The translations under genes were made by a program, and so were the position numbers. A stretch of DNA of 64,000 nucleotides from assembly GCA_038496445.1 (NCBI GenBank), contig JALMLS010000373.1, forward strand, positions 62,001 through 126,000, read 5' to 3'. Of this stretch, positions 49,438 to 64,000 are shown in pieces (position 1 is the stretch's first letter; every line of letters starts with the position of its first letter). Source of the DNA: Trichosphaerium sp. ATCC 40318 (Eukaryota; Protista; Tubulinea). The notes under the pieces are model-generated. The model saw only the letters and a program-made list of their open reading frames with translations. It was not told the origin of the DNA and searched no databases.

Positions 49438-50618
49438 TTACAGTAACAACATTGAAATCATAGCCAATGCAATTGTAAGGAGCAATCCTACGTTAACTCT
49501 AAATCCTGGAGAAGCAGCTCTATCGGCTGTAATATCACTACATCCTGATTCACCAGCGTCCCAGAATTTCGAAGCTGTTTCATCTCTACGACTTTGACCC
49601 TCTGGTGTGAGAGTAACTTTAATCTTGAATCCAGTTCCTCTAAAATCGTCACTGGAAACAGTGACCTAAGGAGGAAATCAGACCTTGGGAAAAAACTGAC
49701 TAAAACTCCAATAACGTTACCGTTTCACTTCCTGATCCAGCGTTTACTAAGACTTCTGTATGCGATATATAGTCAAACGATGTAGTGAATAGAGAAACAC
49801 CTAGAACGATAGAGTTAATGGGCTTCAGCCAAAAGGAAAAGTACGAAAAGAACGAGAATATAGAGTGTCAACTTACGCATGTCTTGCGTCAGCGTGCTAG
49901 TGTAGTCAACTTTTACAGAGACGGAAGAGCCTGATACTGTATTTATAGCATCGTTAATGCATACTTGGTTGACCAGAGCTGATCCTTGCGGAGGTGCTAT
50001 TGTAGGTGGACTTGCTGTTGGAGCTGGAGGTGGTGGAGGTGGGGATGTTCCTGTACCCGAATCCGTGCAAGATGTTGATATCTCAAAGTCTCCAAAGTAA
50101 AGGTACATCGTTTGAGTAGGCCCCCACGATCTTGATCCTAATAAATTAATGAGCAAGTGTACAAAATTATTGTTCTTTTGAAAAGAAATCACACGTGCCT
50201 CCATAGAACGTGTTGAAGAATATCCCTTTGTGAACAATATCATCAGTTCTTCTCCATTGTAAGTCTTCTTGATCCATCTTAAGAGCTCCATCAACCCAAA
50301 CACGTGCACGTCCATTTGAACTTGAACCAGTATTCAAAGTAATCTCTTGTTGGTATAAATGGTACTGATTATCAGCAGGAAACTGCCATCTTCCACGACC
50401 AAGAGATTTGCCAAAATCAGGGTTACAAATATTTTTTGGGTCATCGCATACTCTACAAACACATGTCACAAAGAGAGGTTGCGAGTAGCGAGCAAGAGTG
50501 AGTTTCGGGTGCGCGTTAACTGTCTTTTTTGAACAAAAATTGAAAACATCATTACGCACGTGCTAGATGGTTGTGGCATGTATCCGTATATCTCTCCGTC
50601 GCCATCTGTTCTCCACAT
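49438..50618 (-). pseudogene. 5'-truncated inverted copy of the PL14 lyase gene
   Basis: Starts at the internal MWRTDGDGEIYGY, lacks the signal peptide and GGKLPG exons, and is otherwise open to the same stop codon. Confidence 0.85.
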
Positions 50619-50673: not shown

Positions 50674-52510
50674 ACGAATGTCAACACGTTGTTGCTCGCA
50701 GTACTTGTACTGTGTTGCATCCATGGCGCGTTATGTACCACACTGTGGACAGGAACATTCGCCAATGATTGGATGGATAATTGGGGTGTTAAACATGGTG
50801 GTATTGAACCAAAGAGTGGTACTCCAGGTGGAGGTGAAGTAGTTGAAGGAGATAAGCTTAGAGTTAAATACGCACCTGTACGTATTCAATCAATATTTAC
50901 CAACTTTTGTTTCTCCGTTTCGGTTTTGATGTTTTTTTCCTCTTTTGCTTAGTATCTCGCTAGGGTGAAGCGGGCCAAAGCGGTGTATGGATGTTAGCTG
51001 TCCCTATAGATGACTTGTCTTCCTACAGAACATTATGTCTCAGGTACACATCGCGTAGAAAAAGTTTCCCCGCTCCATTTGATTTCATTAACTTGCGTCA
51101 CGTTTTTTAACGACTTTTTTTCACCGTTAGTTTTATTTTGTTCTTACTTTTAATTGACATTCTTCTATTATAGCTACAAACTCAAGGTACCAACTGGTTA
51201 CGAGTTTTGTAGGGGCGGTAAATTGCCCGGATTGTATGGAACAACAGGAGATACAAGTTTGAACTCGTTGTGCTCCGGTGGTGATCAACCAGGCCCTTGC
51301 TACTCAGCTAGGTACATGTGGAGAACAGATGGCGACGGAGAGATATACGGATACATGCCACAACCATCTAGCACGTGCGTAATGAATTTTAATTTAGTTT
51401 CAAAAAAGACTAATATTGCGCACCCGAAACTCACACTTGCTCGCTACTTGCAACCTCTCTTTCTGACATGTGTTTGTAGAGTCTGTGATGACCAAAAAAA
51501 TATCTGTAACCCTGATTTTGGTAAATCTCTTGGTCGTGGAAGATGGCAGTTTCCTGCTGATAATCAGTACCATTTATACCAACAAGAGATTACTTTGAAT
51601 ACTGGTTCAAGTTCAAATGGACGTGCACGTGTTTGGGTTGATGGAGCTCTTAAGATGGATCAAGAAGACTTACAATGGAGAAGAACTGATGATATTGTTC
51701 ACAAAGGGATATTCTTCAACACGTTCTATGGAGGCACGTGTCCAATTTCTTTTCAAAAGAACAATCATATTGTATACTTGCTACATTACATTACTTAATC
51801 ATTAAATAGGATCAAGGTCGTGGGGACCTACTCAAACGATGTACCTTTACTTTGGAGACTTTGAGATATCAACATCTTGCACGGATTCGGGTACAGGAAC
51901 ATCGCCACCTCCACCTCCACCAGCTCCAACAGCAAGTCCACCTACAATAGCACCTCCGCAAGGATCAGCTCTGGTCAACCAAGTATGCATTAACGATGCT
52001 ATAAATACAGTATCAGGCTCTTCCGTCTCTGTAAAAGTTGACTACACTAGCACGCTGACGCAAGACATGCGTAAGTTGACACTCTATATACTCGTTCTTT
52101 TCGTACTTTTCCTTTTGGCTGAAGCCCCATTAACTCTATCGTTCTAGGTGTTTCTCTATTCACTACATCGTTTGACTATATATCGCATACAGAAGTCTTA
52201 GTAAACGCTGGATCAGGAAGTGAAACGGTAACGTTTTTGGAGTTTTAGTCAGTTTTTTCCCAAGGTCTGATTTCCTCCTTAGGTCACTGTTTCCAGTGAC
52301 GATTTTAGAGGAACTGGATTCAAGATTAAAGTTACTCTCACACCGGAGGGTCAAAGTCGTAGAGATGAAACAGCTTCGAAATTCTGGGACGCTGGTGAAT
52401 CAGGATGTAGTGATATTACAGCGGATAGAGCTGCTTCTCCAGGATTTAGAGTTAACGTAGGATTGCTCCTCACAATTGCATTGGCTATGATTTCAATGTT
52501 GCTACTGTAA
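50674..52510 (+). CDS. Polysaccharide lyase family 14 (alginate/glucuronan lyase-like), secreted, probably GPI-anchored
   Basis: Signal LLLAVLVLCCIHGALC; PL14 motifs GGKLPGLYG, CSGG, SARYMWR..GDGEIYGY, GKSLGRG, GIFFNTFYGG..SW; Pro-rich linker; extra beta-rich domain; hydrophobic C-terminus GLLLTIALAMISMLLL. No in-frame ATG was found (ACG at 50674). Confidence 0.85.
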
Positions 52511-55044: not shown

Positions 55045-56507
55045 TTATTCACTTTGTTTTACAAAAGTCTTTACAACAATTCCTTTCTTTGCAATGCAAT
55101 GCTCTATTAATTGTCCAGTCCGACTCCATCTCCAGTAAGATCCTTCTAATTTACCATTTTTATGTGTAGAACGTTCTTGTAGCTGTCCATTATCATACCA
55201 CATTCGAGAGAGTCCTTCTAACTTATTATTCTTCTTTATAACCTCCGTTTTAGCTGTTCCATTTTGATAGAATTGTCTTACTATTCCACTGTGCTTGTCA
55301 TCCATTTCGCTCTCTTCCTTTATTTGACCATTGTCATACCATTGTTTACTTTTACCCTCTTTTCTTCCGTTAACATAGTGACAATGTATACGTATTTGCC
55401 CTGAGATGAACCAGCTTTTAAACTCTCCATTTGTTTTACCTTCTTTTTGATGTGACTCAACATTAAGCTGTCCATTCTTGAAATATGTCCTTAACAGCTT
55501 CTCCTTCTTTCCATTAACAAAGCTACAATTAACCCTCACTTGACCGTTATCAAACCATTCTGTGTGGAGACCTCTTTTAAGTCCATTCTTGTACTGACTT
55601 TGTTGGCGAAGACTACCATTTTTATGCCACTCAAGAGATGATCCATCAAGTTTTCCATCCTTATAAAAAGCCTTATATTTCTTTCTTCCATTTGAATACC
55701 ATTTCATTATTTCACCTTGTTTGATATCGCTCTTTGATGCATATTGTATAGCCAGCACACCATTCTCAAAGTAATCTTTTGTGACACCATGTCTCTTCCC
55801 TTCTCGGAATTCAATTTCACACTTTATTCGTCCATTAGTGTGCCATGACTTATAGACACCGTCTCTTAACCCATCAACAAAACTACTCGTAAAATTCTGT
55901 TGACCACTAGGGTACCACCGAGATATTGCACCGTTAGCAATACCGCGTTCGAACTGCTGCTTTACGCATTTTTTTCCGTTAGTGTACCACGCCAACCAGG
56001 CGCCTGTACGTTTTAATTCATGATCGTAATGGCTCATCGTGGCTGCTGTTCGCGAAAGGGTATGCCACTTTGTAAAAGTGTCTCTATCGTACGCAGCAAT
56101 CTTTTGTTGGAGTTCTGGAGGTAGGCGAAGAAGCGGAGGCGTTACTACGTTGTTGGCTAGGTAAAAAATCAGTTTTAGCGTTAAATTACATTTTAACGTC
56201 ATTAACACGACGCTTCAAGCGTAGTACCGAAGAAATCAAAGTCTTTAAGCGCTGTATCGATGATATTAATTTGTAGTTCCGAGTCTGCGCTCTTAGCGCT
56301 TTTTACTTGCTCAAGCATATCAAAACGAGCTTCGCTGAGTGTTTCCCGAAGATTTTCGGCTTCTACTTGAGCATTTGCAACGATTTCTACAGCACGGTCT
56401 TTTGCATCTTGTATTATACGCTCTGCTTCTTTCCTAGCGATATTCAATATTTCTTCACACTCACTCTCGAGCTTAGCACTAAGTGACGCTATGCTGCCTT
56501 TCCACAT
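55045..56507 (-). CDS. Coiled-coil + F-box-like + MORN-variant (YwqK-type) repeat protein
   Basis: One intron (~56158-56228) joins a coiled-coil exon (EAERIIQDAKDRAVEIVANAQVEAE) to LLRLPPELQQKIAAY and about 12-13 W(Y/H/F)xNGQ-type repeats. Confidence 0.82.
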
Positions 56508-56785: not shown

Positions 56786-57151
56786 ATGACAGAAGGGTTT
56801 CCCGTTGTACGTTTATGTTTAATTCAAGTTTTTACAACCTTATACGCGTAGAAATATGTAGAGAAGCTCATAAAAGCAAAGTTATCCAATTTGAAAGGTA
56901 CTTTTCTTGTAAACCGCCAATATTTAAATTGACAACTCACTCTAGTAAATGGAGATGCCACAACGCTAACGGCGGCACATTTTACTTTTTTTGTACAAGG
57001 TACAACTCAAAACGGTCGTAAATAGACTCTAATGATAGCCATAGAGTTCATAAATAGAGCAGCGTTAATAGCAAAGGAAGCAGGGCATGATACAGTTGAA
57101 GTACAACACGTTGAAAAAATGTTAGCGCAATTCTTGTTAGACTTTGCGTGA
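56786..57151 (+). CDS. CENPX: Centromere protein X / MHF2 histone-fold protein
   Basis: Spliced MTEGFPVKYVEKLIKAKLSNLKVNGDATTLTAAHL..FVQEFINRAA...VEVQHVEKMLAQFLLDFA, ending in the CENP-X-type Q.LLDF. It needs one extra T in a poly-T run near 56986. Confidence 0.75.
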
Positions 57152-57317
57152 CATATCAATAAAACACCCTTGCCAAGCTTTTGTTGTTTTTTTTTTGTTT
57201 GTTCACTTGACTGACGAAGAAAATGTCGTAAACCTTTTCTACTCGCTTAAATATCTACTACGCAAGGTCTACAACATCACTTGGACGAGATACCGAACAG
57301 AAGAGCTGTCTTAAATC

Positions 57318-60300
57318 ATGAGACTACTCATTCTGTTCGCTATTTTAGCATTATCACGTGTACATGCGAAGGTGATAGATATTCAACCGTGGAAGGACTC
57401 TGGAGCGTATCAAAAGTGTCTTAGTACGTCTAGGTTGTTACTAATCTTTTTACCCTTATTTATTACCTCTAAAGAGATGTATCTAACACTTAATTATAGA
57501 AGTAGACCAGAGTTGGCTTTCAGTTGTTAACACGAGTGGTATTTACACTGACGGTAAAAAATTCAAGGCCCAATGTATGGGATATTCACCTACACCTATC
57601 GGTACGTTCAATAATACCTTTTATTTGTAAAATACGTCTATCCCTAAATGTCAAAGAGGGTTTTCGTTTTTTGACTTTTTTTTTGCTGTTCTCGGCTCTG
57701 CTTGTTATGTCGCTGACGTCCTCGCTTAGGTTATTCGTTTGAGGTTAATCCACATGGTGATTACTATACTTCTAATTGGAAGAACCTGTGGGAGAGGGAT
57801 TTGTTGTTAATGCACAAGGCAGGCTTGAATCTTGTGCGTCTGTGGAACTGGAACCTTCAGGTATGTCTTTGGGAACCATCAGTGTTCGGATTTTTAGGAA
57901 CTGGGGAAACCCTCCCTTTCTGACTTATTTGTGACTTAGAGTGATCACACTGAGTTTCTAGACAAGTGTAAGGAGTATGGCATGCGTGTACGCCCTTTAT
58001 TAGCGCTATAGTTCGCCGTTAAGCTGATAACAAGCGCTTAGGTTCTTGTTCCTTTTATTATGAATATAAAGATCTATCCGGACTTGAAGGATATGCCTAC
58101 ACGTCGTTTGGCTTTAGAAAACTTTAGAGCTTTCCTTGAGCGACAAAGTAAGTATTTGTCTTTTGTTGTCAACTCTTTTTCAAAGAAGGTTTTACCTTGG
58201 CTTTGAAAAGGTTATGAGTCTTGTCACAAAAAAAGACGTGAACTCTTTGTGTGCCACAAATCTTTGTTTTCTTTTTTATTTTGAAATGTCATGCGCATTT
58301 CGTGGATAGCACTACAATTAGCATTATTGACACTGCGACGCTGTTTTTAAACCTGTTTATGACACGTGACGTTTTACATAAAATAAACAAGATTTTTTTT
58401 GTGTTTTACAACTAATCTCTGTTTAGATCACCCTGCAGTGTTCGGCTATCTTATTGGAAATGAGCTTAATAAAGTACCTTCATTTAAATTAGTAAAAATG
58501 AATCTAATCACGCAATACTTTAGGAGTTCCAGACACAGCTTCCTGAGCTTTTTTCGCTTGTTAACCAAATGGTGTTTATAAGTAACCAGTAAGTCTTTTC
58601 TTGTTTAAGGGTTTGCGTGTTTTATATTCTGATAATCTCCTTTTAGGTATCATTTGGATACCTACTTCCCTGGAGAAGAAATGGTCAACGGCAAACCTAG
58701 AAAAATCCATCCTATTACAATCCCGCTCGCTGATGACGGTTCTTTTCATTCTTTATTACAAGACTACAATGAGATTTTAAATATATCTTACTGGTCATTG
58801 CAAACATATCGTAATCCATTCGATGATGGTCATACTGGAATGGGTGATGTACGTATACATGGACATACTAGTGATATTAAAGATAGATAAATAATCTCAC
58901 GTGTAGGTTTTTAACAAATTCTCAGAACTTACACAAAGCAGAAGAACGCATCTTATGATTACAGAATTTGGTGCTGACTCTAACTCACACCATCCTGAAC
59001 GTCCAAAGTCTCAAGCTGAAATGATAAAAAAGCAATGGGAAACAGTTAGGGATGGAGCTTTCTCTCTTGGCGGTTGTATTATGGTAGAACAGTCTCAACA
59101 AAACCCAAAAAAATTATTTACTCATTTTGCTAGGAATTTAATGACGAGTGGTGTAAAGGAACTTTCTCTGATACACGAAATCCTGGCCCTTGTCCGAGTT
59201 ACCAATATAAATCTCAGAGTCCCTGTTCTCATAATGTATCATATCAATTGATATATGAAGAGTATATGGGTCTTGTAGAGCTTTGGGAAGGTACGTTGTT
59301 TTGTGTAGGTTTTTTTTGTAAATGTTCTTGATTGATGTGTCTGTAGGTCCTTCAAAAGCTGGTAACAAGTTGATCAGATTGGACCATGAGTACTGTATAA
59401 AGCCTAAAGAAGCGTATTTCGCTATTGGAGAGTCATGGAATGGCAGTTTTGCTAAAACGTCACCGTGTATTGGCTCTAAGTTTCACACTCAGTTCAACGG
59501 AGAAGATTATTGTTGTTCTTTTGATAACTCATTTAAGGTTAGAAAAAAGTCGTGGCAATTCTCCCGCTGACTTTCATGTGTAGTTGACTATTATCGCTGG
59601 TGGTATTATTGGTGTTCTTGCTACTGCTGCGCCTTTTGCATTTGTTATAATGAAATCTTGTTTAAAAGACTGTGCTTGTGTAAAGAAAATGTCAAAGGCA
59701 AAGAAGAAAAAAAATGGAACAGAAAAGAGATCGAGCTCTTTATCGAATGTTGCCGGAGATACAAACCGACGCGTAACGAAGGTAAGATTCTATTGAACTA
59801 GTAAAAAAATCCAGCATGTTTCGTGACTAACTTATAGGAGGAGCTGAGTCGAGCTTTTTCGATGTTTCGCCCTAGATCCACAAAGTTGTTGAGGTAAGAA
59901 TATTATTATTTGTAGGAATTTTTTGAGAATGTAATGTTTGGTGCTCTGTAGGGAGAGATTACTTCGATCTATAACTGATATGCTTGATGCCCAAATAGTT
60001 AAAGATTATGATATTGCATTACGCGTTGTTTATCAGCGTTACATGGAAGGTTATTATATCTGGAAGGGCAAGAAAGACTTTGAGACAGCTGTAGACACCA
60101 AAAAGATTTTGGACGAACTTGCTCTCTACGTATTTACTTGCCAAACCGCTGGTAAGAATTAAGAAAGTAATTGATATGTTTGCATACTAAATATTGTACA
60201 GGAACCATTAATCATTCTCCAGAGAAAGTTATGGAGGTAAATGTTTACGAAGTTTTCTCAGAACATTCAGCACTATTTAGCATTTGCGCTCTTTTTGATA

Positions 60301-63300
60301 GCGTTGTGTCCACCAACATTCTTTTTGTAGGTATACGACTTTCTTAAAGAGCACTTGCTTGATCCGCAACATGATCCAAATATCCAACGCGACGTTACTT
60401 TCACAGTACCTGCCAAGGGAAAACAAACTGAAGAGTATATCCGACAAATATTTGAGTATTACTATTACGTATTCAAGTACTGCAAGCTCACATTCGATGA
60501 CATTAACTACGACGGCATGAGGTAAATCAAATACTTGAGAAGCTCCATATTTATTTACAAGAAAAACCACTCACTGATACGTTTAGACGAAAGAACTTCA
60601 CCATCAGACTGTGGAACTATAAGCCATTTTTGAACTTGCGGTTTTTTGACAAGAAACCAGCGGCACTTGGTACTCATGACTTTTGGGGCAAAGAGCACGA
60701 GTTTGGTAAAGTAAGTTTCGGTTATTAGTTTATTATTTCTTATCATTTTAACACTACAACAGGGTGTCCACGACTTTTTAGCTTGGAAAAAAGTGAACAA
60801 TCCTAAAACATTGACGAAGTGGTTTCCTGAGCGTGGAGGTTTATTTACTCTTGTATATAATTACAATTGGTATATTAGACTTAATTATGTTATGGCTATC
60901 ATTGTTTGGGCACTCATTGATAAAGTACGATACAGGAAAACGAAAACCAAGAAAAAAATGAGAAAAAATTATTAAATTTTGTAATCAAAACCTTCTTTAA
61001 CCTCTTTTTAGGGTGCTTGTCCGAATGCTGTTGTTACTCTTGGTGCTAAAGGTGATGTCGCTTTTGGACTACTGATATGGCTTTTAAATTTCTGGGTTGT
61101 TGGTCTTCAGCATACAAAGATTTCTCATTTCTTTTCTGGAGTGTTTTGGTTTGGTATGACATTCGTGATATTCTACTTAAAACGTACGACAATGCCCTGC
61201 GGAAACAAATAATATTTAACTGTGTATTTAAGCTATAAAGGCTATAACGATTGATATCGGAGTATTTGCGGTGTCCTTGGACTTGATAATTTTCGCTTAT
61301 TTGCTTCTGAGGTAACTCTTTTAGTTCATTGACTTCCTTTTCTTATTACTTTATACAGAGCATTAAAGATAGTTGTCCAAGAGATTTATCTTAATTTCTT
61401 TGTATCTGTACCTTTTGATATTGCCGGTCGTTTATCAAGACAAGGATGGAGAGGGGTCTTGTACGATGACAGATCTCGAAAAACTGAAAAACTAACATGA
61501 ATTTTGTTTTAGGCCAAAGAGAGTCTTACACAAGATCCTTACTTTCCTCTTCAACCTCGTTTTTTGGGTTTCTGTGATAGCACTGAACATTGTACTATTC
61601 ACTGTGTACGTATATCACACTGAAAAGAATAAGAATTCGTATGAGATCTTAACATGCTATTATAGTTTTGAACCAACTCTTGTTCGAATTGACTTTGATC
61701 AATGCATTTGTACTGAAGAACCCAGCGAATTGAATATGCCTTACTACCACAAGAACTGTGCACTTATACAGACAAGTTGTTATTCTGGTGTTATCATAAC
61801 ATGGATCGCCACAATCCTCGTTTTCGGTGTCATCAATAACATATGCTACCAGGTTCGCTTTTCTACCTTTTCTCTTACTTCAAATCGTGCCCCTCAGAGT
61901 AACCTTTTATAGGCTGGTCTCTTAGTTTATGGTATCATATTCGGTACAATTAGACGTGTCGGAAACGTAAAGACTTGGAGTGATGTCACAGACTTTCAAA
62001 AACCGATTACGGAAAAGAACTTCAAAGCAATTTCTTATGTATTCAAAGACAGAACTGGTAAGTTCGAAGCTTGTTATTCGTTTTCATGTACACTTACGCA
62101 TGTTTTCTTTTTTAGCTCTCATAGGAGACGTATGGGAAAAGATTATAGAAGCTATGGGTGAAGAAGATATCCTAAGTGAAGAGGAAGAAACCAACTACAA
62201 AAAACGGTTGATGTCTATTCCTCCAAAGTAAGTTGTATGTTTTCTTTGTCGCCTACTAACTATTTTTGAACAGTAATAAAGAAGCTAAAAGAAGGTTGAT
62301 ACAGTTCCTATGGTCTCTTGAATCAATGACACATTGGCATAACCGCAGTCGCGAAGTTTATGTAAGTCAGAAAATGTGATAAGAGGTACTTACCTATTTT
62401 TCCTTTTTAGGACTCTTATTATACTCAACGTCATCGTGTTCGTACTATGCCTTCATGGACTGTTATGGTTCCAGTGTACAGTGAGACTATTATATACTCC
62501 ATAGAAGAGCTTCTAAGACCACCAGAGGTAAAGGTATCAACAGGAGAATCCATTTATTCAAGGAACAAGAAAATGTACAGTTACAGCAAAGTAATTTCGT
62601 TCCTCACACTTTTTAGCGTTGTTAAGGAAACAAGACAAAAAATATCAAAGCTTGAGTACCTTGCAGGAACATTTACTGAAGATTGGGAGGTATTCGTTCA
62701 ACGTAAGATCAAGCCGTTGACAGGAATATTGAATCCACAAAAAGCTTTGAAGATGCTGATCAGGGTACAACAAAAAATCTGTTTTGTGAAGCTTGTTCTT
62801 ACGCTGTTTAGTATGAATTACGAGATCCAGAAGTCATCAAACGTGTTCGTCTTTGGTGTAGTCTTCGTGGTCAAACACTTTGCAAAACAGTCAGAGGTCT
62901 TCATTATTACAGAGATGCAATAAGATTCCTTCTTTCACTTGAAGAACCAGATTTAAGCGAAAACGAGCTTGATGCGCTTGTTGATAGAAAGTTCCAGATT
63001 CTTATCACCCACCAACGTTTCAGTGATGCTGTACAAGGTAAAAACAATAATTGGCTTGAAGTACGTACCCATAATTTTGTCCAAGAGAGGATTCTTATTT
63101 TTTTCTTTTTCTGAACGAAATAAATTAGGCAATGGAGTTATTGAAAGAAGTGTACCCACATTTCGACCTTGCATTCAATATTGAGAATGCACGTACTGGT
63201 GAATTCAAGTCTTGTTGTTTTACTAGAGATACGTTTAAATGGATGTCTAAGCTAGAAAACGAAAATGGAAACCGTAGAAGAGGGAACAATGTTCCCGCAG

Positions 63301-64000
63301 AAAAGAGCTTGAAATTGAGATATGCCGTAAGGAGTTTTGTTCCGTTTTTTTTTTGCCTTGCTAATGGTTTTTGTTAGCAAGGTGATTACGTTGTTGTCAA
63401 GCGTCCTGGACCTTTGAAGCTTGGTGAAGGTAAAGCAGAGAATCAAATACATGCACTACCGTTCGCGTTACACCAAGTGATACAAGTCAACGGTACGTTG
63501 TTGGAAAAAGTAAACAAAAACAACTTAAGCTGACTTTGAACGAAAGATATGAACCAAGATAACTCTTTTGAGGATGCTATTAAAGTACCAACACTTTTAT
63601 ACAAATGGATGACACCTACAGGTATGATTATCAAACATTTAACTAAAAGTTGGAGCCACGTGTTCTTACACATAAAAAGGTCAACTAAACGAGGAAATTG
63701 CAAAGTATGATCACAACAAAGTTATCCCAAAATATCGCGTTGTAGGATTCCCAGAGCACTGCTTCACCAGGTAGGACATAATTAACCTTTTATTTCGAGT
63801 ATTATTCTAATAGAATTATGTTAGGGATCTCAGTAAAGTTGGAGAGTTTATGGGATCAGCTGAATGGACTTTTGTCACAATCACACAAAGAACGTTATCT
63901 TATCCTTTGGCAACAAGACTTCATTACGGCCATCCTGATTTCTTTGACGGATACTGGGTCAGAACACGTGGAGGTCCATCAAAAGCGTCACTTAAGGTAC
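57318..64000 (+). CDS. Fusion protein: secreted clan GH-A glycoside hydrolase - TM - FKS/callose-type 1,3-beta-glucan synthase (GT48); 3' end lies beyond the window
   Basis: GH: GYSPTPIG, WERDL.LM..AGLNLVRLW, HPAVFGYLIGNELN, ITEFGAD, EFNDEW. GT48: EAKRRL..F..SL, MPSWTVMVPVYSE, VRLWCSLRGQTL..TVRG, LGEGKAENQ, DMNQDN.FED.IK, GFPEH.FT, QRTL, RLHYGHPDF, TRGG.SKAS. Confidence 0.9.

What the first reader, a model, noticed from the sequence alone, without database searches (positions are those of the whole stretch)
57318..64000. Beta-1,3-glucan synthase (GT48) carrying its own extracellular glycoside hydrolase/transglycosylase domain
Seen: one spliced reading frame runs from a signal peptide (MRLLILFAILALSRVHA) through a TIM-barrel GH domain with both clan GH-A glutamates intact (GNE, Glu at 58462; TEFG, Glu at 58964). 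It continues through one TM helix (59584-59652) with a basic cytosolic flank, an FKS1-domain-1-like region, a TM block and the GT48 catalytic motifs. The GH-to-synthase junction is bridged by two short phase-0 GT-AG introns (59538-59583, 59782-59837), with no stop and no room for a promoter. Established: fungal Fks1 and plant callose synthases start with a cytosolic N-terminus and no GH domain. Fungi remodel the extruded glucan with separate GH72 (Gas/Gel) enzymes, while alpha-glucan synthase Ags1 has an analogous built-in extracellular GH13 domain. From memory a GH17-GT48 fusion exists in Euglena; this needs checking, but the GH here looks GH2-TIM/GH158/GH72-like rather than GH17. Inference: a one-polypeptide synthesise, export and cut/transglycosylate machine for beta-1,3-glucan (cyst wall, cell coat or storage glucan) in a non-fungal, non-plant protist.
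Basis: partly seen in the sequence, partly recalled or inferred. Interest (0 to 1): 0.9.

Follow-up and report, generated by a model that had tools for sequence, protein, structure and literature searches.

The report
Glucan synthase with built-in glucanase domain
This is one real, expressed protist gene that joins an outward-facing beta-1,3-glucan-cutting or -transferring enzyme domain to a beta-1,3-glucan synthase; the same fusion already sits unremarked in public sequences of kinetoplastids, diplonemids and unnamed environmental protists.

Summary
A 34-exon model (57318 to the window end, 1468 aa, no stop) encodes signal peptide, clan GH-A TIM barrel (GNE Glu at 58462, TEFG Glu at 58964), one TM helix, a cytosolic region, a TM block and GT48.

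RNA contigs splice both junction introns exactly as predicted. All 28 exonic differences between those contigs and the window are synonymous.

The fusion is not unique. The same colinear protein occurs as uninterrupted ORFs in metagenome contigs, in Bodo saltans (CUI14841.1), two prokinetoplastids and two diplonemids. The window protein groups with an AT-rich metagenomic lineage outside that euglenozoan clade.

A family profile matches three beta-1,3-glucan-active families about equally: GH158 (73 bits), GH72 Gas2 (72) and GH157 (71). GH2 scores 53 or less. Pfam calls several members Glyco_hydro_72.

Best reading: a synthase with a tethered exoplasmic beta-1,3-glucan remodeler. Whether it hydrolyses or transfers is untested.

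I found no paper describing this GH-GT48 combination. One 2026 paper cites a GH16-GT48 fusion in oomycetes. I rate it a new variant of a known kind, of moderate to high interest. The scan had not noted it before in this genome.

The parts
57268..57317 (+). 5' untranslated leader. The upstream gene's stop lies only about 170 nt before the ATG.
   Evidence: The RNA contig of X1 begins at 57268 with adapter sequence beyond it; sequence read.
57318..57368 (+). Signal peptide (aa 1-17, MRLLILFAILALSRVHA)
   Evidence: Hydrophobic core with a V-H-A end. Homologs P0008, P0010 and P0016 also begin with signal peptides.
57318..59537 (+). Exons 1-11: exoplasmic clan GH-A TIM-barrel domain (aa about 44-414) plus a Cys-rich tail (to aa 444)
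   Evidence: An HMM built from 22 homologs scores the window model at 289.6 bits over aa 44-414. Five of the ten GH introns are confirmed by RNA joints.
58462..58464 (+). Glu177 of the NHPA...GNELN motif, the predicted acid/base
   Evidence: Invariant G-N-E column in alignment A1. It aligns with the Gas2 GNE motif; from memory this is E176, consistent with the E176Q mutant entries 5fih and 2w61.
58964..58966 (+). Glu289 of the TEFG motif, the predicted nucleophile
   Evidence: Invariant E column in A1. It aligns with the SEFG motif of Gas2.
59143..59157 (+). DEWCK, the window's version of the family signature (E)WxDEWWKG
   Evidence: D and the first W are invariant in A1, and the motif is present in all fused homologs.
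59538..59583 (+). Junction intron 11 (46 nt, phase 0, GT-AG). It contains the TGA that would end a GH-only product if the intron were retained.
   Evidence: Spliced out in an X1 contig with at least 151 nt on each side.
59584..59781 (+). Exon 12: single TM helix (59584-59652) and basic cytosolic flank
   Evidence: Hydropathy 2.17 and net charge +9 in the next 30 aa. In 12 of the 13 other proteins scanned a TM helix sits at the same place after the DEWWK motif and is followed at once by basic residues; the scan found none in P0021.
59782..59837 (+). Junction intron 12 (56 nt, phase 0, GT-AG)
   Evidence: Spliced out in an X1 contig.
59838..60924 (+). Exons 13-18: conserved cytosolic region between the TM helix and the TM block (contains YMEGYYIW)
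   Evidence: Aligns colinearly with P0008, P0006 and P0017 across the junction. The motif is shared. Pfam finds no FKS1_dom1 here.
60850..62057 (+). TM block, about six hydrophobic segments (aa about 745-985)
   Evidence: Hydropathy scan. Introns confirmed by RNA joints, including the corrected 61184-61232.
62116..63999 (+). First half of the GT48 catalytic domain; the gene continues beyond the window
   Evidence: Pfam PF02364: exon 29 scores 53.2 bits and exon 34 scores 63.1 bits, both above the 37.2 cut-off. The ORF 62411-62764 scores 33.1 bits.

Best explanation
Shown: one multi-exon gene encodes a single membrane protein.
- A cleavable signal peptide precedes a retaining clan GH-A (beta/alpha)8 glycosidase domain on the exoplasmic side (outside the cell, or inside a vesicle or granule).
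- A single TM helix with a basic cytosolic flank follows.
- The chain then continues into a Fks/callose-synthase-type GT48 beta-1,3-glucan synthase: a cytosolic accessory region, a TM block and the cytosolic catalytic domain.
- The rest of the protein lies beyond the window.

Inferred:
- The GT48 part polymerises UDP-glucose into beta-1,3-glucan and threads it through its TM channel.
- The tethered GH domain has its nearest solved relatives in GH158, GH72 and GH157, all of which act on beta-1,3-glucan.
- It meets the emerging chain and either cuts it (release or length control) or transfers it onto another glucan (elongation, branching, cross-linking).
- Glu177 would act as acid/base and Glu289 as nucleophile.

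The polymer may be a cyst or cell-coat glucan, or a paramylon-like storage glucan made inside a membrane-bound granule.
For: One gene:
- The 34-exon frame has no stop.
- RNA contigs splice exons 9-10-11-12 in one contig and exons 12-13 in another.
- The RNA contigs differ from the window at 28 exonic sites, all synonymous, including sites in exon 12.
- The fusion is colinear with uninterrupted ORFs elsewhere. L001 7414-11976 is open for 1520 codons from GNE through GT48. P0008 is a 2566-aa single ORF. A single BLAST alignment of the window with P0017 spans GH, TM helix and GT48.

GT48: window exons pass the Pfam PF02364 cut-off. The homolog P0021 matches solved Fks1 at E 4e-43.

GH:
- The family HMM scores the window at 290 bits.
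- The GNE and E(F)G glutamates are invariant.
- The AF2 model of the Bodo homolog has pLDDT 85.
- VIA-align gives Z 28.8 to GH157 laminarinase and 27.9 to Gas2.
- The profile against PDB gives GH158 73.3, Gas2 72.1 and GH157 71.0 bits, against 53 or less for GH2.

Topology: signal peptide plus TM helix plus a positive-inside flank, a pattern conserved across fused homologs.

Context: Bodo, Diplonema and Euglena are reported to store paramylon (PMC10161547). Synthase-remodeler coupling has been shown for Bgs3-Ghs2 (PMC13612389).
Against: - No enzymology exists for any member, and hydrolase versus transferase cannot be told from sequence.
- The structure model is of the Bodo homolog (about 33% identical), not of the window protein.
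- The spliced window GH domain could not be submitted to Pfam, dbCAN or folding, because it has no reference.
- The RNA evidence comes from overlapping assembled contigs, not one full-length read. No contig was laid on 58444-58841.
- A GH-only isoform made by retention of intron 11 cannot be excluded.
- The C-terminal half of the synthase is outside the window.
- The organism, the polymer and the cellular location are unknown.
Confidence: 0.75

Rival explanations
1. There are two adjacent genes: a membrane-anchored GH and a separate GT48 synthase starting at the Met in exon 13. On this view the continuous frame is an artefact of gene modelling or of read-through transcription.
For: If intron 11 is retained, a TGA at 59568-59570 ends a GH-only product. 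If intron 12 is retained, a stop at 59794-59796 gives a type I GH with a short tail. A free-standing protein of that second type exists in Leptophrys vorax (P0016). Exon 13 contains an ATG. The genome is compact, with about 170 nt between the upstream stop and the ATG.
Against: - Both introns are spliced in RNA contigs.
- The differences from the RNA contigs are all synonymous across the junction exon.
- In intron-poor relatives the same junction lies inside a single uninterrupted ORF.
- Ten or more database proteins share the colinear order.
Confidence: 0.02
2. The fusion is real, but the GH domain is a degradative hydrolase. It would mobilise a stored beta-1,3-glucan, or release and terminate chains, rather than act as a Gas/Gel-type transglycosylase that builds a wall.
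For: Two of the three equally close solved families, GH158 and GH157, are crystallised with laminari-oligosaccharides (PDB titles); from memory, untested here, both are endo-beta-1,3-glucanases rather than transferases. The euglenozoan relatives belong to lineages reported to store paramylon (PMC10161547). The GH72+ Cys-rich CBM43 module and the GPI anchor are absent.
Against: The Pfam hits are to Glyco_hydro_72, the transferase family, and Gas2 is as close as the hydrolases. Tethering a pure hydrolase to the synthase outlet would seem wasteful unless it controls chain length.
Confidence: 0.3
3. The GH domain is a non-catalytic glucan-binding or chaperone module that holds or guides the nascent chain.
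For: The window has DEWCK where nearly all relatives have DEWWK. Many GH-like domains have become lectins.
Against: Both catalytic glutamates, the NHPA motif and the conserved Tyr before the nucleophile are invariant over 22 very divergent sequences, and all are present in the window.
Confidence: 0.05

Closest known systems
Uncharacterised GH72-like + GT48 proteins in public databases, e.g. Bodo saltans CUI14841.1 / UniProt A0A0S4KKB3 ('glucan synthase-like protein, putative', 2557 aa); also Papus ankaliazontas, Apiculatamorpha spiralis, Rhynchopus euleeides and Hemistasia transcripts
   Same: The order of parts is identical: signal peptide, GH with GNE, (T/S)E(F/Y)G and DEWWK motifs, one TM helix, cytosolic region, TM block, GT48. 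Pfam finds PF03198 plus PF02364.
   Different: They are only about 30-36% identical to the window protein. In the tree the window groups with an AT-rich metagenomic lineage (SH-aLRT 96) outside the euglenozoan clade (SH-aLRT 99). The window gene has at least 33 introns, whereas the ones held as DNA (P0008, P0006) are single ORFs or nearly so. None has been studied experimentally, as far as I could find.
Fungal Fks1/Bgs and plant callose synthases (GT48)
   Same: The catalytic family is the same (PF02364 above cut-off; homolog against solved Fks1, E 4e-43). A cytosolic region and a TM block precede the catalytic domain.
   Different: By established knowledge, those enzymes start with a cytosolic N-terminus and have no signal peptide, no ectodomain and no extra TM helix. 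Pfam FKS1_dom1 is not detected here.
GH72 Gas/Gel/Phr beta-1,3-glucanosyltransferases
   Same: Both are clan GH-A barrels with glutamates at the same positions. The Pfam GH72 model passes its cut-off in four homologs. VIA-align gives Z 27.9. Both face the exoplasmic side.
   Different: Gas/Gel/Phr enzymes are GPI-anchored free proteins, often with a CBM43 module. Here the domain is TM-tethered to the synthase and has a DEWWKG signature. It is no closer to GH72 than to GH158 or GH157.
GH158 and GH157 bacterial beta-1,3-glucan-binding enzymes (PDB 9oro/6pal; 9fz9/9g4n)
   Same: They give the best profile scores (73.3 and 71.0 bits) and the best structural Z (28.8). Both were crystallised with laminari-oligosaccharides.
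   Different: They are soluble bacterial enzymes, only 16-19% identical over the aligned structure, and not linked to a synthase. That they are endo-hydrolases is from memory, not tested here.
Ags1/Mok1 alpha-1,3-glucan synthase of fungi
   Same: The logic is the same: an extracellular GH domain, a TM helix, an intracellular synthase domain and a multipass region, all in one polypeptide (PMC13612389; PMC2150588 abstract).
   Different: The families are unrelated (GH13 plus GT5) and the polymer is different (alpha-glucan).
Bgs3-Ghs2 module of S. pombe, and the oomycete GT48-GH16 fusion cited with it
   Same: Both couple a GT48 synthase to a beta-glucan remodeler, as a two-protein complex or as a fusion (PMC13612389).
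   Different: The partner there is GH16, which has a beta-jelly-roll fold. No GH16 signal was found in the window family. That paper states the fused form is restricted to oomycetes, which the present family contradicts for a different GH.

Membership tests
GT48 (Fks/callose synthase; Pfam PF02364 Glucan_synthase) | Sequence matches the family model above the curated cut-off | tested here: met
   Window exon 29 scores 53.2 bits and exon 34 scores 63.1 bits against a cut-off of 37.2. Homologs P0006, P0008 and P0021 score 274-346 bits.
GT48 (Fks/callose synthase; Pfam PF02364 Glucan_synthase) | Cytosolic catalytic domain flanked by two multi-helix TM blocks | tested here: inconclusive
   The N-terminal TM block is present, with about six hydrophobic segments. 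The C-terminal block lies beyond the window; it is present in full-length homologs such as P0008.
GT48 (Fks/callose synthase; Pfam PF02364 Glucan_synthase) | Makes beta-1,3-glucan from UDP-glucose | not testable with these tools
   Needs an enzyme assay or genetics.
Fks1-type N-terminal accessory domain (Pfam PF14288 FKS1_dom1) | Match to the FKS1_dom1 model | tested here: not met
   No hit at E up to 0.1-10, either in window exons 14, 16 and 18 or in P0008, P0021, P0040 and P0006. The region is conserved only within the fused family.
Clan GH-A retaining glycosidase | (beta/alpha)8 barrel with an Asn-Glu acid/base after strand 4 and a Glu nucleophile after strand 7 | tested here: met
   The GNE and TEFG glutamates are invariant in A1 and present in the window. 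The AF2 model of the homolog is a TIM barrel with pLDDT 85. Z is 27-29 to GH157, GH72 and GH2 barrels.
GH72 (Pfam PF03198 Glyco_hydro_72; Gas/Gel/Phr) | Match to the family model above the cut-off of 25.9 bits | tested here: inconclusive
   Met in P0016 (54.4), P0010 (44.3), P0008 (39.9) and P0021 (32.9). Not met in the L001 piece (20.7) or P0040 (14.1). Single window exons give nothing. The spliced window domain could not be submitted.
GH72 (Pfam PF03198 Glyco_hydro_72; Gas/Gel/Phr) | Closer to GH72 than to any other GH family | tested here: not met
   Profile against PDB: GH158 73.3, Gas2 72.1, GH157 71.0 bits. VIA-align: GH157 Z 28.8, Gas2 Z 27.9.
GH72 (Pfam PF03198 Glyco_hydro_72; Gas/Gel/Phr) | GPI anchor, with or without a C-terminal Cys-rich CBM43 module | tested here: not met
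   The domain is followed by a TM helix and about 1000 or more further residues. No CBM43/X8 hit in Pfam scans of homologs.
GH72 (Pfam PF03198 Glyco_hydro_72; Gas/Gel/Phr) | Beta-1,3-glucanosyl transfer rather than hydrolysis | not testable with these tools
   Needs an assay on laminari-oligosaccharides.
Oomycete GT48-GH16 fusion (as cited in PMC13612389) | GH16 domain in the same polypeptide as GT48 | tested here: not met
   No GH16 family appears in any Pfam scan of the window pieces or homologs. The fold is a TIM barrel, not a jelly roll.

The most novel reading that the evidence does not exclude
The GH(72/157/158-like)-GT48 fusion is an old, vertically inherited architecture. It would be shared by Euglenozoa and at least two further protist lineages, including the window's organism. 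It would be the form in which these organisms make their beta-1,3-glucan (paramylon-like storage granules or cyst walls). On this reading, chain synthesis and chain transfer or length control are done by one self-contained machine. This would be a beta-glucan counterpart of Ags1, and would contradict the published view that GT48-GH fusions are confined to oomycetes.
Probability: 0.4. Interest if true: 0.75.

Novelty: new variant of a known kind. Interest (0 to 1): 0.6.

Why it matters
How a cell couples making a wall or storage glucan to remodelling it is a live question.
- A 2026 study showed that fission yeast needs a dedicated Bgs3-Ghs2 (GT48 plus GH16) complex. It stated that fused versions exist only in oomycetes (PMC13612389).
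- This gene family is a natural covalent version built with a different, Gas-like or laminarinase-like domain. It occurs in several protist lineages.
- It therefore offers a one-protein system for testing whether a tethered GH sets chain length, branching or crystallinity of beta-1,3-glucan.
- It gives a candidate for the paramylon-type synthase of kinetoplastids and diplonemids.
- It defines a eukaryotic and bacterial GH group that sits between GH72, GH157 and GH158 and may merit its own CAZy family.

The architecture can be seen in public domain annotations, so this is an unstudied family rather than a new principle.

Tried and rejected
- **Representatives search.** The single search used the 118-aa ORF 62411-62764, which reads through an in-frame intron. 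It gave only 6 weak hits. One of them, P0006, opened the way to the family.
- **Pfam on single GH exons.** This gave nothing significant because the exons are too short.
- **The spliced window protein.** It has no reference, so I did not type it into Pfam, PDB, atlas or folding tools. I analysed it locally instead with BLAST and HMMER and modelled the Bodo homolog.
- **FKS1_dom1.** Not detected.
No signal for either.
- **Literature.** Ten full-text searches found no description of a GH72/157/158-like plus GT48 protein. Judelson 2017 and O'Neill 2015 are not held, and I did not try to fetch Tanaka 2017. Morris 2009 does not mention glucan in its main text.
- **Organism identity.** Rfam and tRNA scans, the scan notes and an atlas search of a neighbouring gene did not settle it.
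- **Structured RNA in intron 5.** This 279-nt intron carries its own low-depth RNA contig. Folding gave z -0.33 and there was no Rfam hit, so I dropped the idea.
- **Intron 62528-62626.** This 99-nt in-frame intron is modelled from homolog spacing only. Its joint was not among those listed.
Full report
**What is in the sequence**

Reading 56800-64000 and its three forward frames, I assembled a 34-exon gene on the + strand, from the ATG at 57318 to the window end.
- All introns are GT-AG and 46-279 nt long.
- The model gives 1468 codons with no stop, after one correction from RNA.
  - The signal peptide reads MRLLILFAILALSRVHA.
  - The GNE Glu codon is at 58462-58464.
  - The TEFG Glu codon is at 58964-58966.
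  - The TM helix is at 59584-59652, followed by a very basic flank (net +9 in 30 residues).
  - The two junction introns are phase 0, at 59538-59583 and 59782-59837.

**Transcript evidence**

One RNA run of the same organism (coded X1) holds 29% of the sampled words of the stretch. Its contigs were laid on 57250-63200.
- They show the joints 57423/57500, 57601/57730, 57860/57940, 59083/59134, 59290/59347, 59537/59584 and 59781/59838, plus eight listed joints in the synthase part.
- One 653-nt contig joins exons 9, 10, 11 and 12. A second contig joins exons 12 and 13.
- The contigs moved the end of exon 19 from 61153 to 61183.
- They differ from the window at 31 listed places. All 28 that fall in my exons are synonymous, and the other 3 lie in intron 5. 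That validates the frame, including in the junction exon, and shows purifying selection.

Caveats:
- These are assembled contigs, not single molecules.
- Nothing was laid on 58444-58841.
- The 99-nt in-frame intron at 62528-62626 rests on homolog spacing alone.

**Independent proof from relatives**

My one exhaustive search was poorly chosen and gave six weak hits. One of them, P0006, is a 1480-aa ORF from an ENA metagenome contig.
- In that contig (L001) a frame is open for 1520 codons, from before the GNE motif through the nucleophile, a TM helix, the cytosolic region, the TM block and half of GT48.
- Searches seeded with the P0006 and P0008 GH regions gave full-length proteins of 2488-3476 aa, plus one of 1857 aa. 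All carry Pfam PF03198 plus PF02364.
- P0008 is a single 7.7-kb ORF in a JGI contig.
- The named sources are Bodo saltans CUI14841.1 / A0A0S4KKB3, Papus ankaliazontas, Apiculatamorpha spiralis, Rhynchopus euleeides and a Hemistasia transcript.
- A further metagenomic group (P0028/P0040) also carries the fusion.
- The window protein aligns colinearly with them across the junction. One alignment with P0017 covers window aa 189-1245.
- In 12 of the 13 other proteins scanned (the scan found no TM helix in P0021) one TM helix lies roughly 100-195 residues after the DEWWK motif and is followed at once by basic residues.
- A free-standing form exists in the vampyrellid Leptophrys vorax (P0016): signal peptide, GH, Ser-rich linker, TM helix and a short basic tail. 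This suggests how the fusion could have arisen.

**Which families**

GT48 is secure. Window exons 29 and 34 alone pass the Pfam cut-off, and the Bodo homolog matches solved Fks1 at E 4e-43. FKS1_dom1 is not detected anywhere in the family.

For the GH part:
- An HMM built from 22 homologs scores the window at 289.6 bits over aa 44-414.
- The invariant columns include NHPA, GNE, a Tyr, the nucleophile E-x-G, and D and W of DEWWKG. The window reads DEWCKG.
- Pfam calls P0016, P0010, P0008 and P0021 Glyco_hydro_72, but not the L001 piece or P0040.
- P0008 alone hits yeast Gas2 best (E 1e-5), with the GNE and E-F-G motifs aligned.
- The family profile is equidistant from three families: GH158 at 73.3 bits, Gas2 at 72.1 and GH157 at 71.0. 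GH2 glucuronidases score 53 or less.
- An AlphaFold2 model of the Bodo ectodomain (pLDDT 85, pTM 0.86) gives Z 28.8 to GH157, 27.9 to Gas2 and 27.9 to GH2 barrels.
- AlphaFold DB neighbours are mostly unnamed 'GH2 catalytic domain' proteins.

I therefore file the domain as a clan GH-A family lying between GH72, GH157 and GH158. It is not proven to be GH72. All three neighbour families were crystallised with laminari-oligosaccharides (PDB titles). The fused partner makes beta-1,3-glucan, so that polymer is the likely substrate.

**Phylogenetic position**

A quick maximum-likelihood tree of 16 rows gives the following.
- The diplonemid, prokinetoplastid and bodonid-like sequences form one clade (SH-aLRT 99).
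- The window groups with the L001/P0017 lineage (SH-aLRT 96), outside that clade.
- P0040 sits on a long branch of uncertain place.

The tree has no proper outgroup, and I could not add fungal, plant or stramenopile GT48s.

The window's organism stays unidentified. It is intron-rich, 37% GC and compact. A neighbouring gene has giant-virus-like MORN_2 relatives.

**Mechanism**

Shown: the order of parts, intact catalytic residues, expression and purifying selection.

Inferred from the signal peptide and the positive-inside flank: the GH domain is exoplasmic and the region after the TM helix is cytosolic. This matches the cytosolic N-terminal region of Fks1 (established knowledge).

Inferred function: the tethered domain acts on the chain leaving the synthase, either by transfer or by hydrolysis.

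Bodo, Diplonema and Euglena are reported to store paramylon (PMC10161547). In the euglenozoan relatives the protein may therefore be the storage-glucan synthase, with the GH domain inside the granule membrane. For the window's organism, wall versus storage is open.

**Novelty**

- Ten full-text searches found no description of this combination.
- The nearest statement is in PMC13612389. It says that some oomycetes fuse GT48 to GH16 and that such fusions are restricted to oomycetes. It names Ags1 as the alpha-glucan analogue.
- The cited sources could not be checked. Morris 2009 has no mention of glucan in its main text, and Judelson 2017 is not held.
- Because the architecture is visible in public domain annotations of Bodo saltans and in EukProt, it is not categorically new.
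- It is an unstudied variant of the synthase-with-built-in-remodeler theme, and the window adds a divergent, intron-rich member from outside Euglenozoa.
- I put about a one-in-three chance on a description existing in papers I could not read.

Noticed in passing
window 55045-56208 (-): A single-exon 387-aa ORF made of MORN_2-type repeats. Its nearest ESM-atlas clusters are Nucleocytoviricota MORN_2/F-box proteins (score 0.92). It may be a gene family shared with, or acquired from, giant viruses.
   Followed up: partly
window about 56900-57150 (+): A short histone-fold gene ending ...VEKMLAQFLLDFA. From memory it resembles CENP-X/MHF2. Its stop lies only about 170 nt upstream of the synthase ATG, which shows how compact the genome is.
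   Followed up: no
window 58148-58426 (intron 5 of the gene): This is by far the longest intron (279 nt). A separate low-depth RNA contig (201 nt, 58170-58363) with small indels lies inside it. Folding gives z -0.33 and Rfam gives nothing, so it is probably unspliced precursor or a divergent allele rather than an intronic RNA gene.
   Followed up: yes
window 50167-50559 (-) and 51154-51798 (+): Inverted paralogous ORFs share a block reading ...NICNPDFGKSLGRGRWQFPADNQYHLYQQ.... They lie inside the quasi-palindrome already noted by the scan. From memory they resemble PL14-type polysaccharide lyases.
   Followed up: no
L003 8585-11333: Next to the kinetoplastid-like fused synthase gene lie a double cyclopropane-fatty-acyl/methyltransferase gene and a 1248-aa CotH-domain gene.
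   Followed up: no
L004 3-284 (P0001): A JGI metagenome fragment is 55% identical to the window over 42 aligned residues around the MPSWTV motif (62% over the 37 matched by phmmer). It diverges right after ...RPE, where the window has its modelled intron at 62528. That would fit a relative with an intron at the same position.
   Followed up: partly
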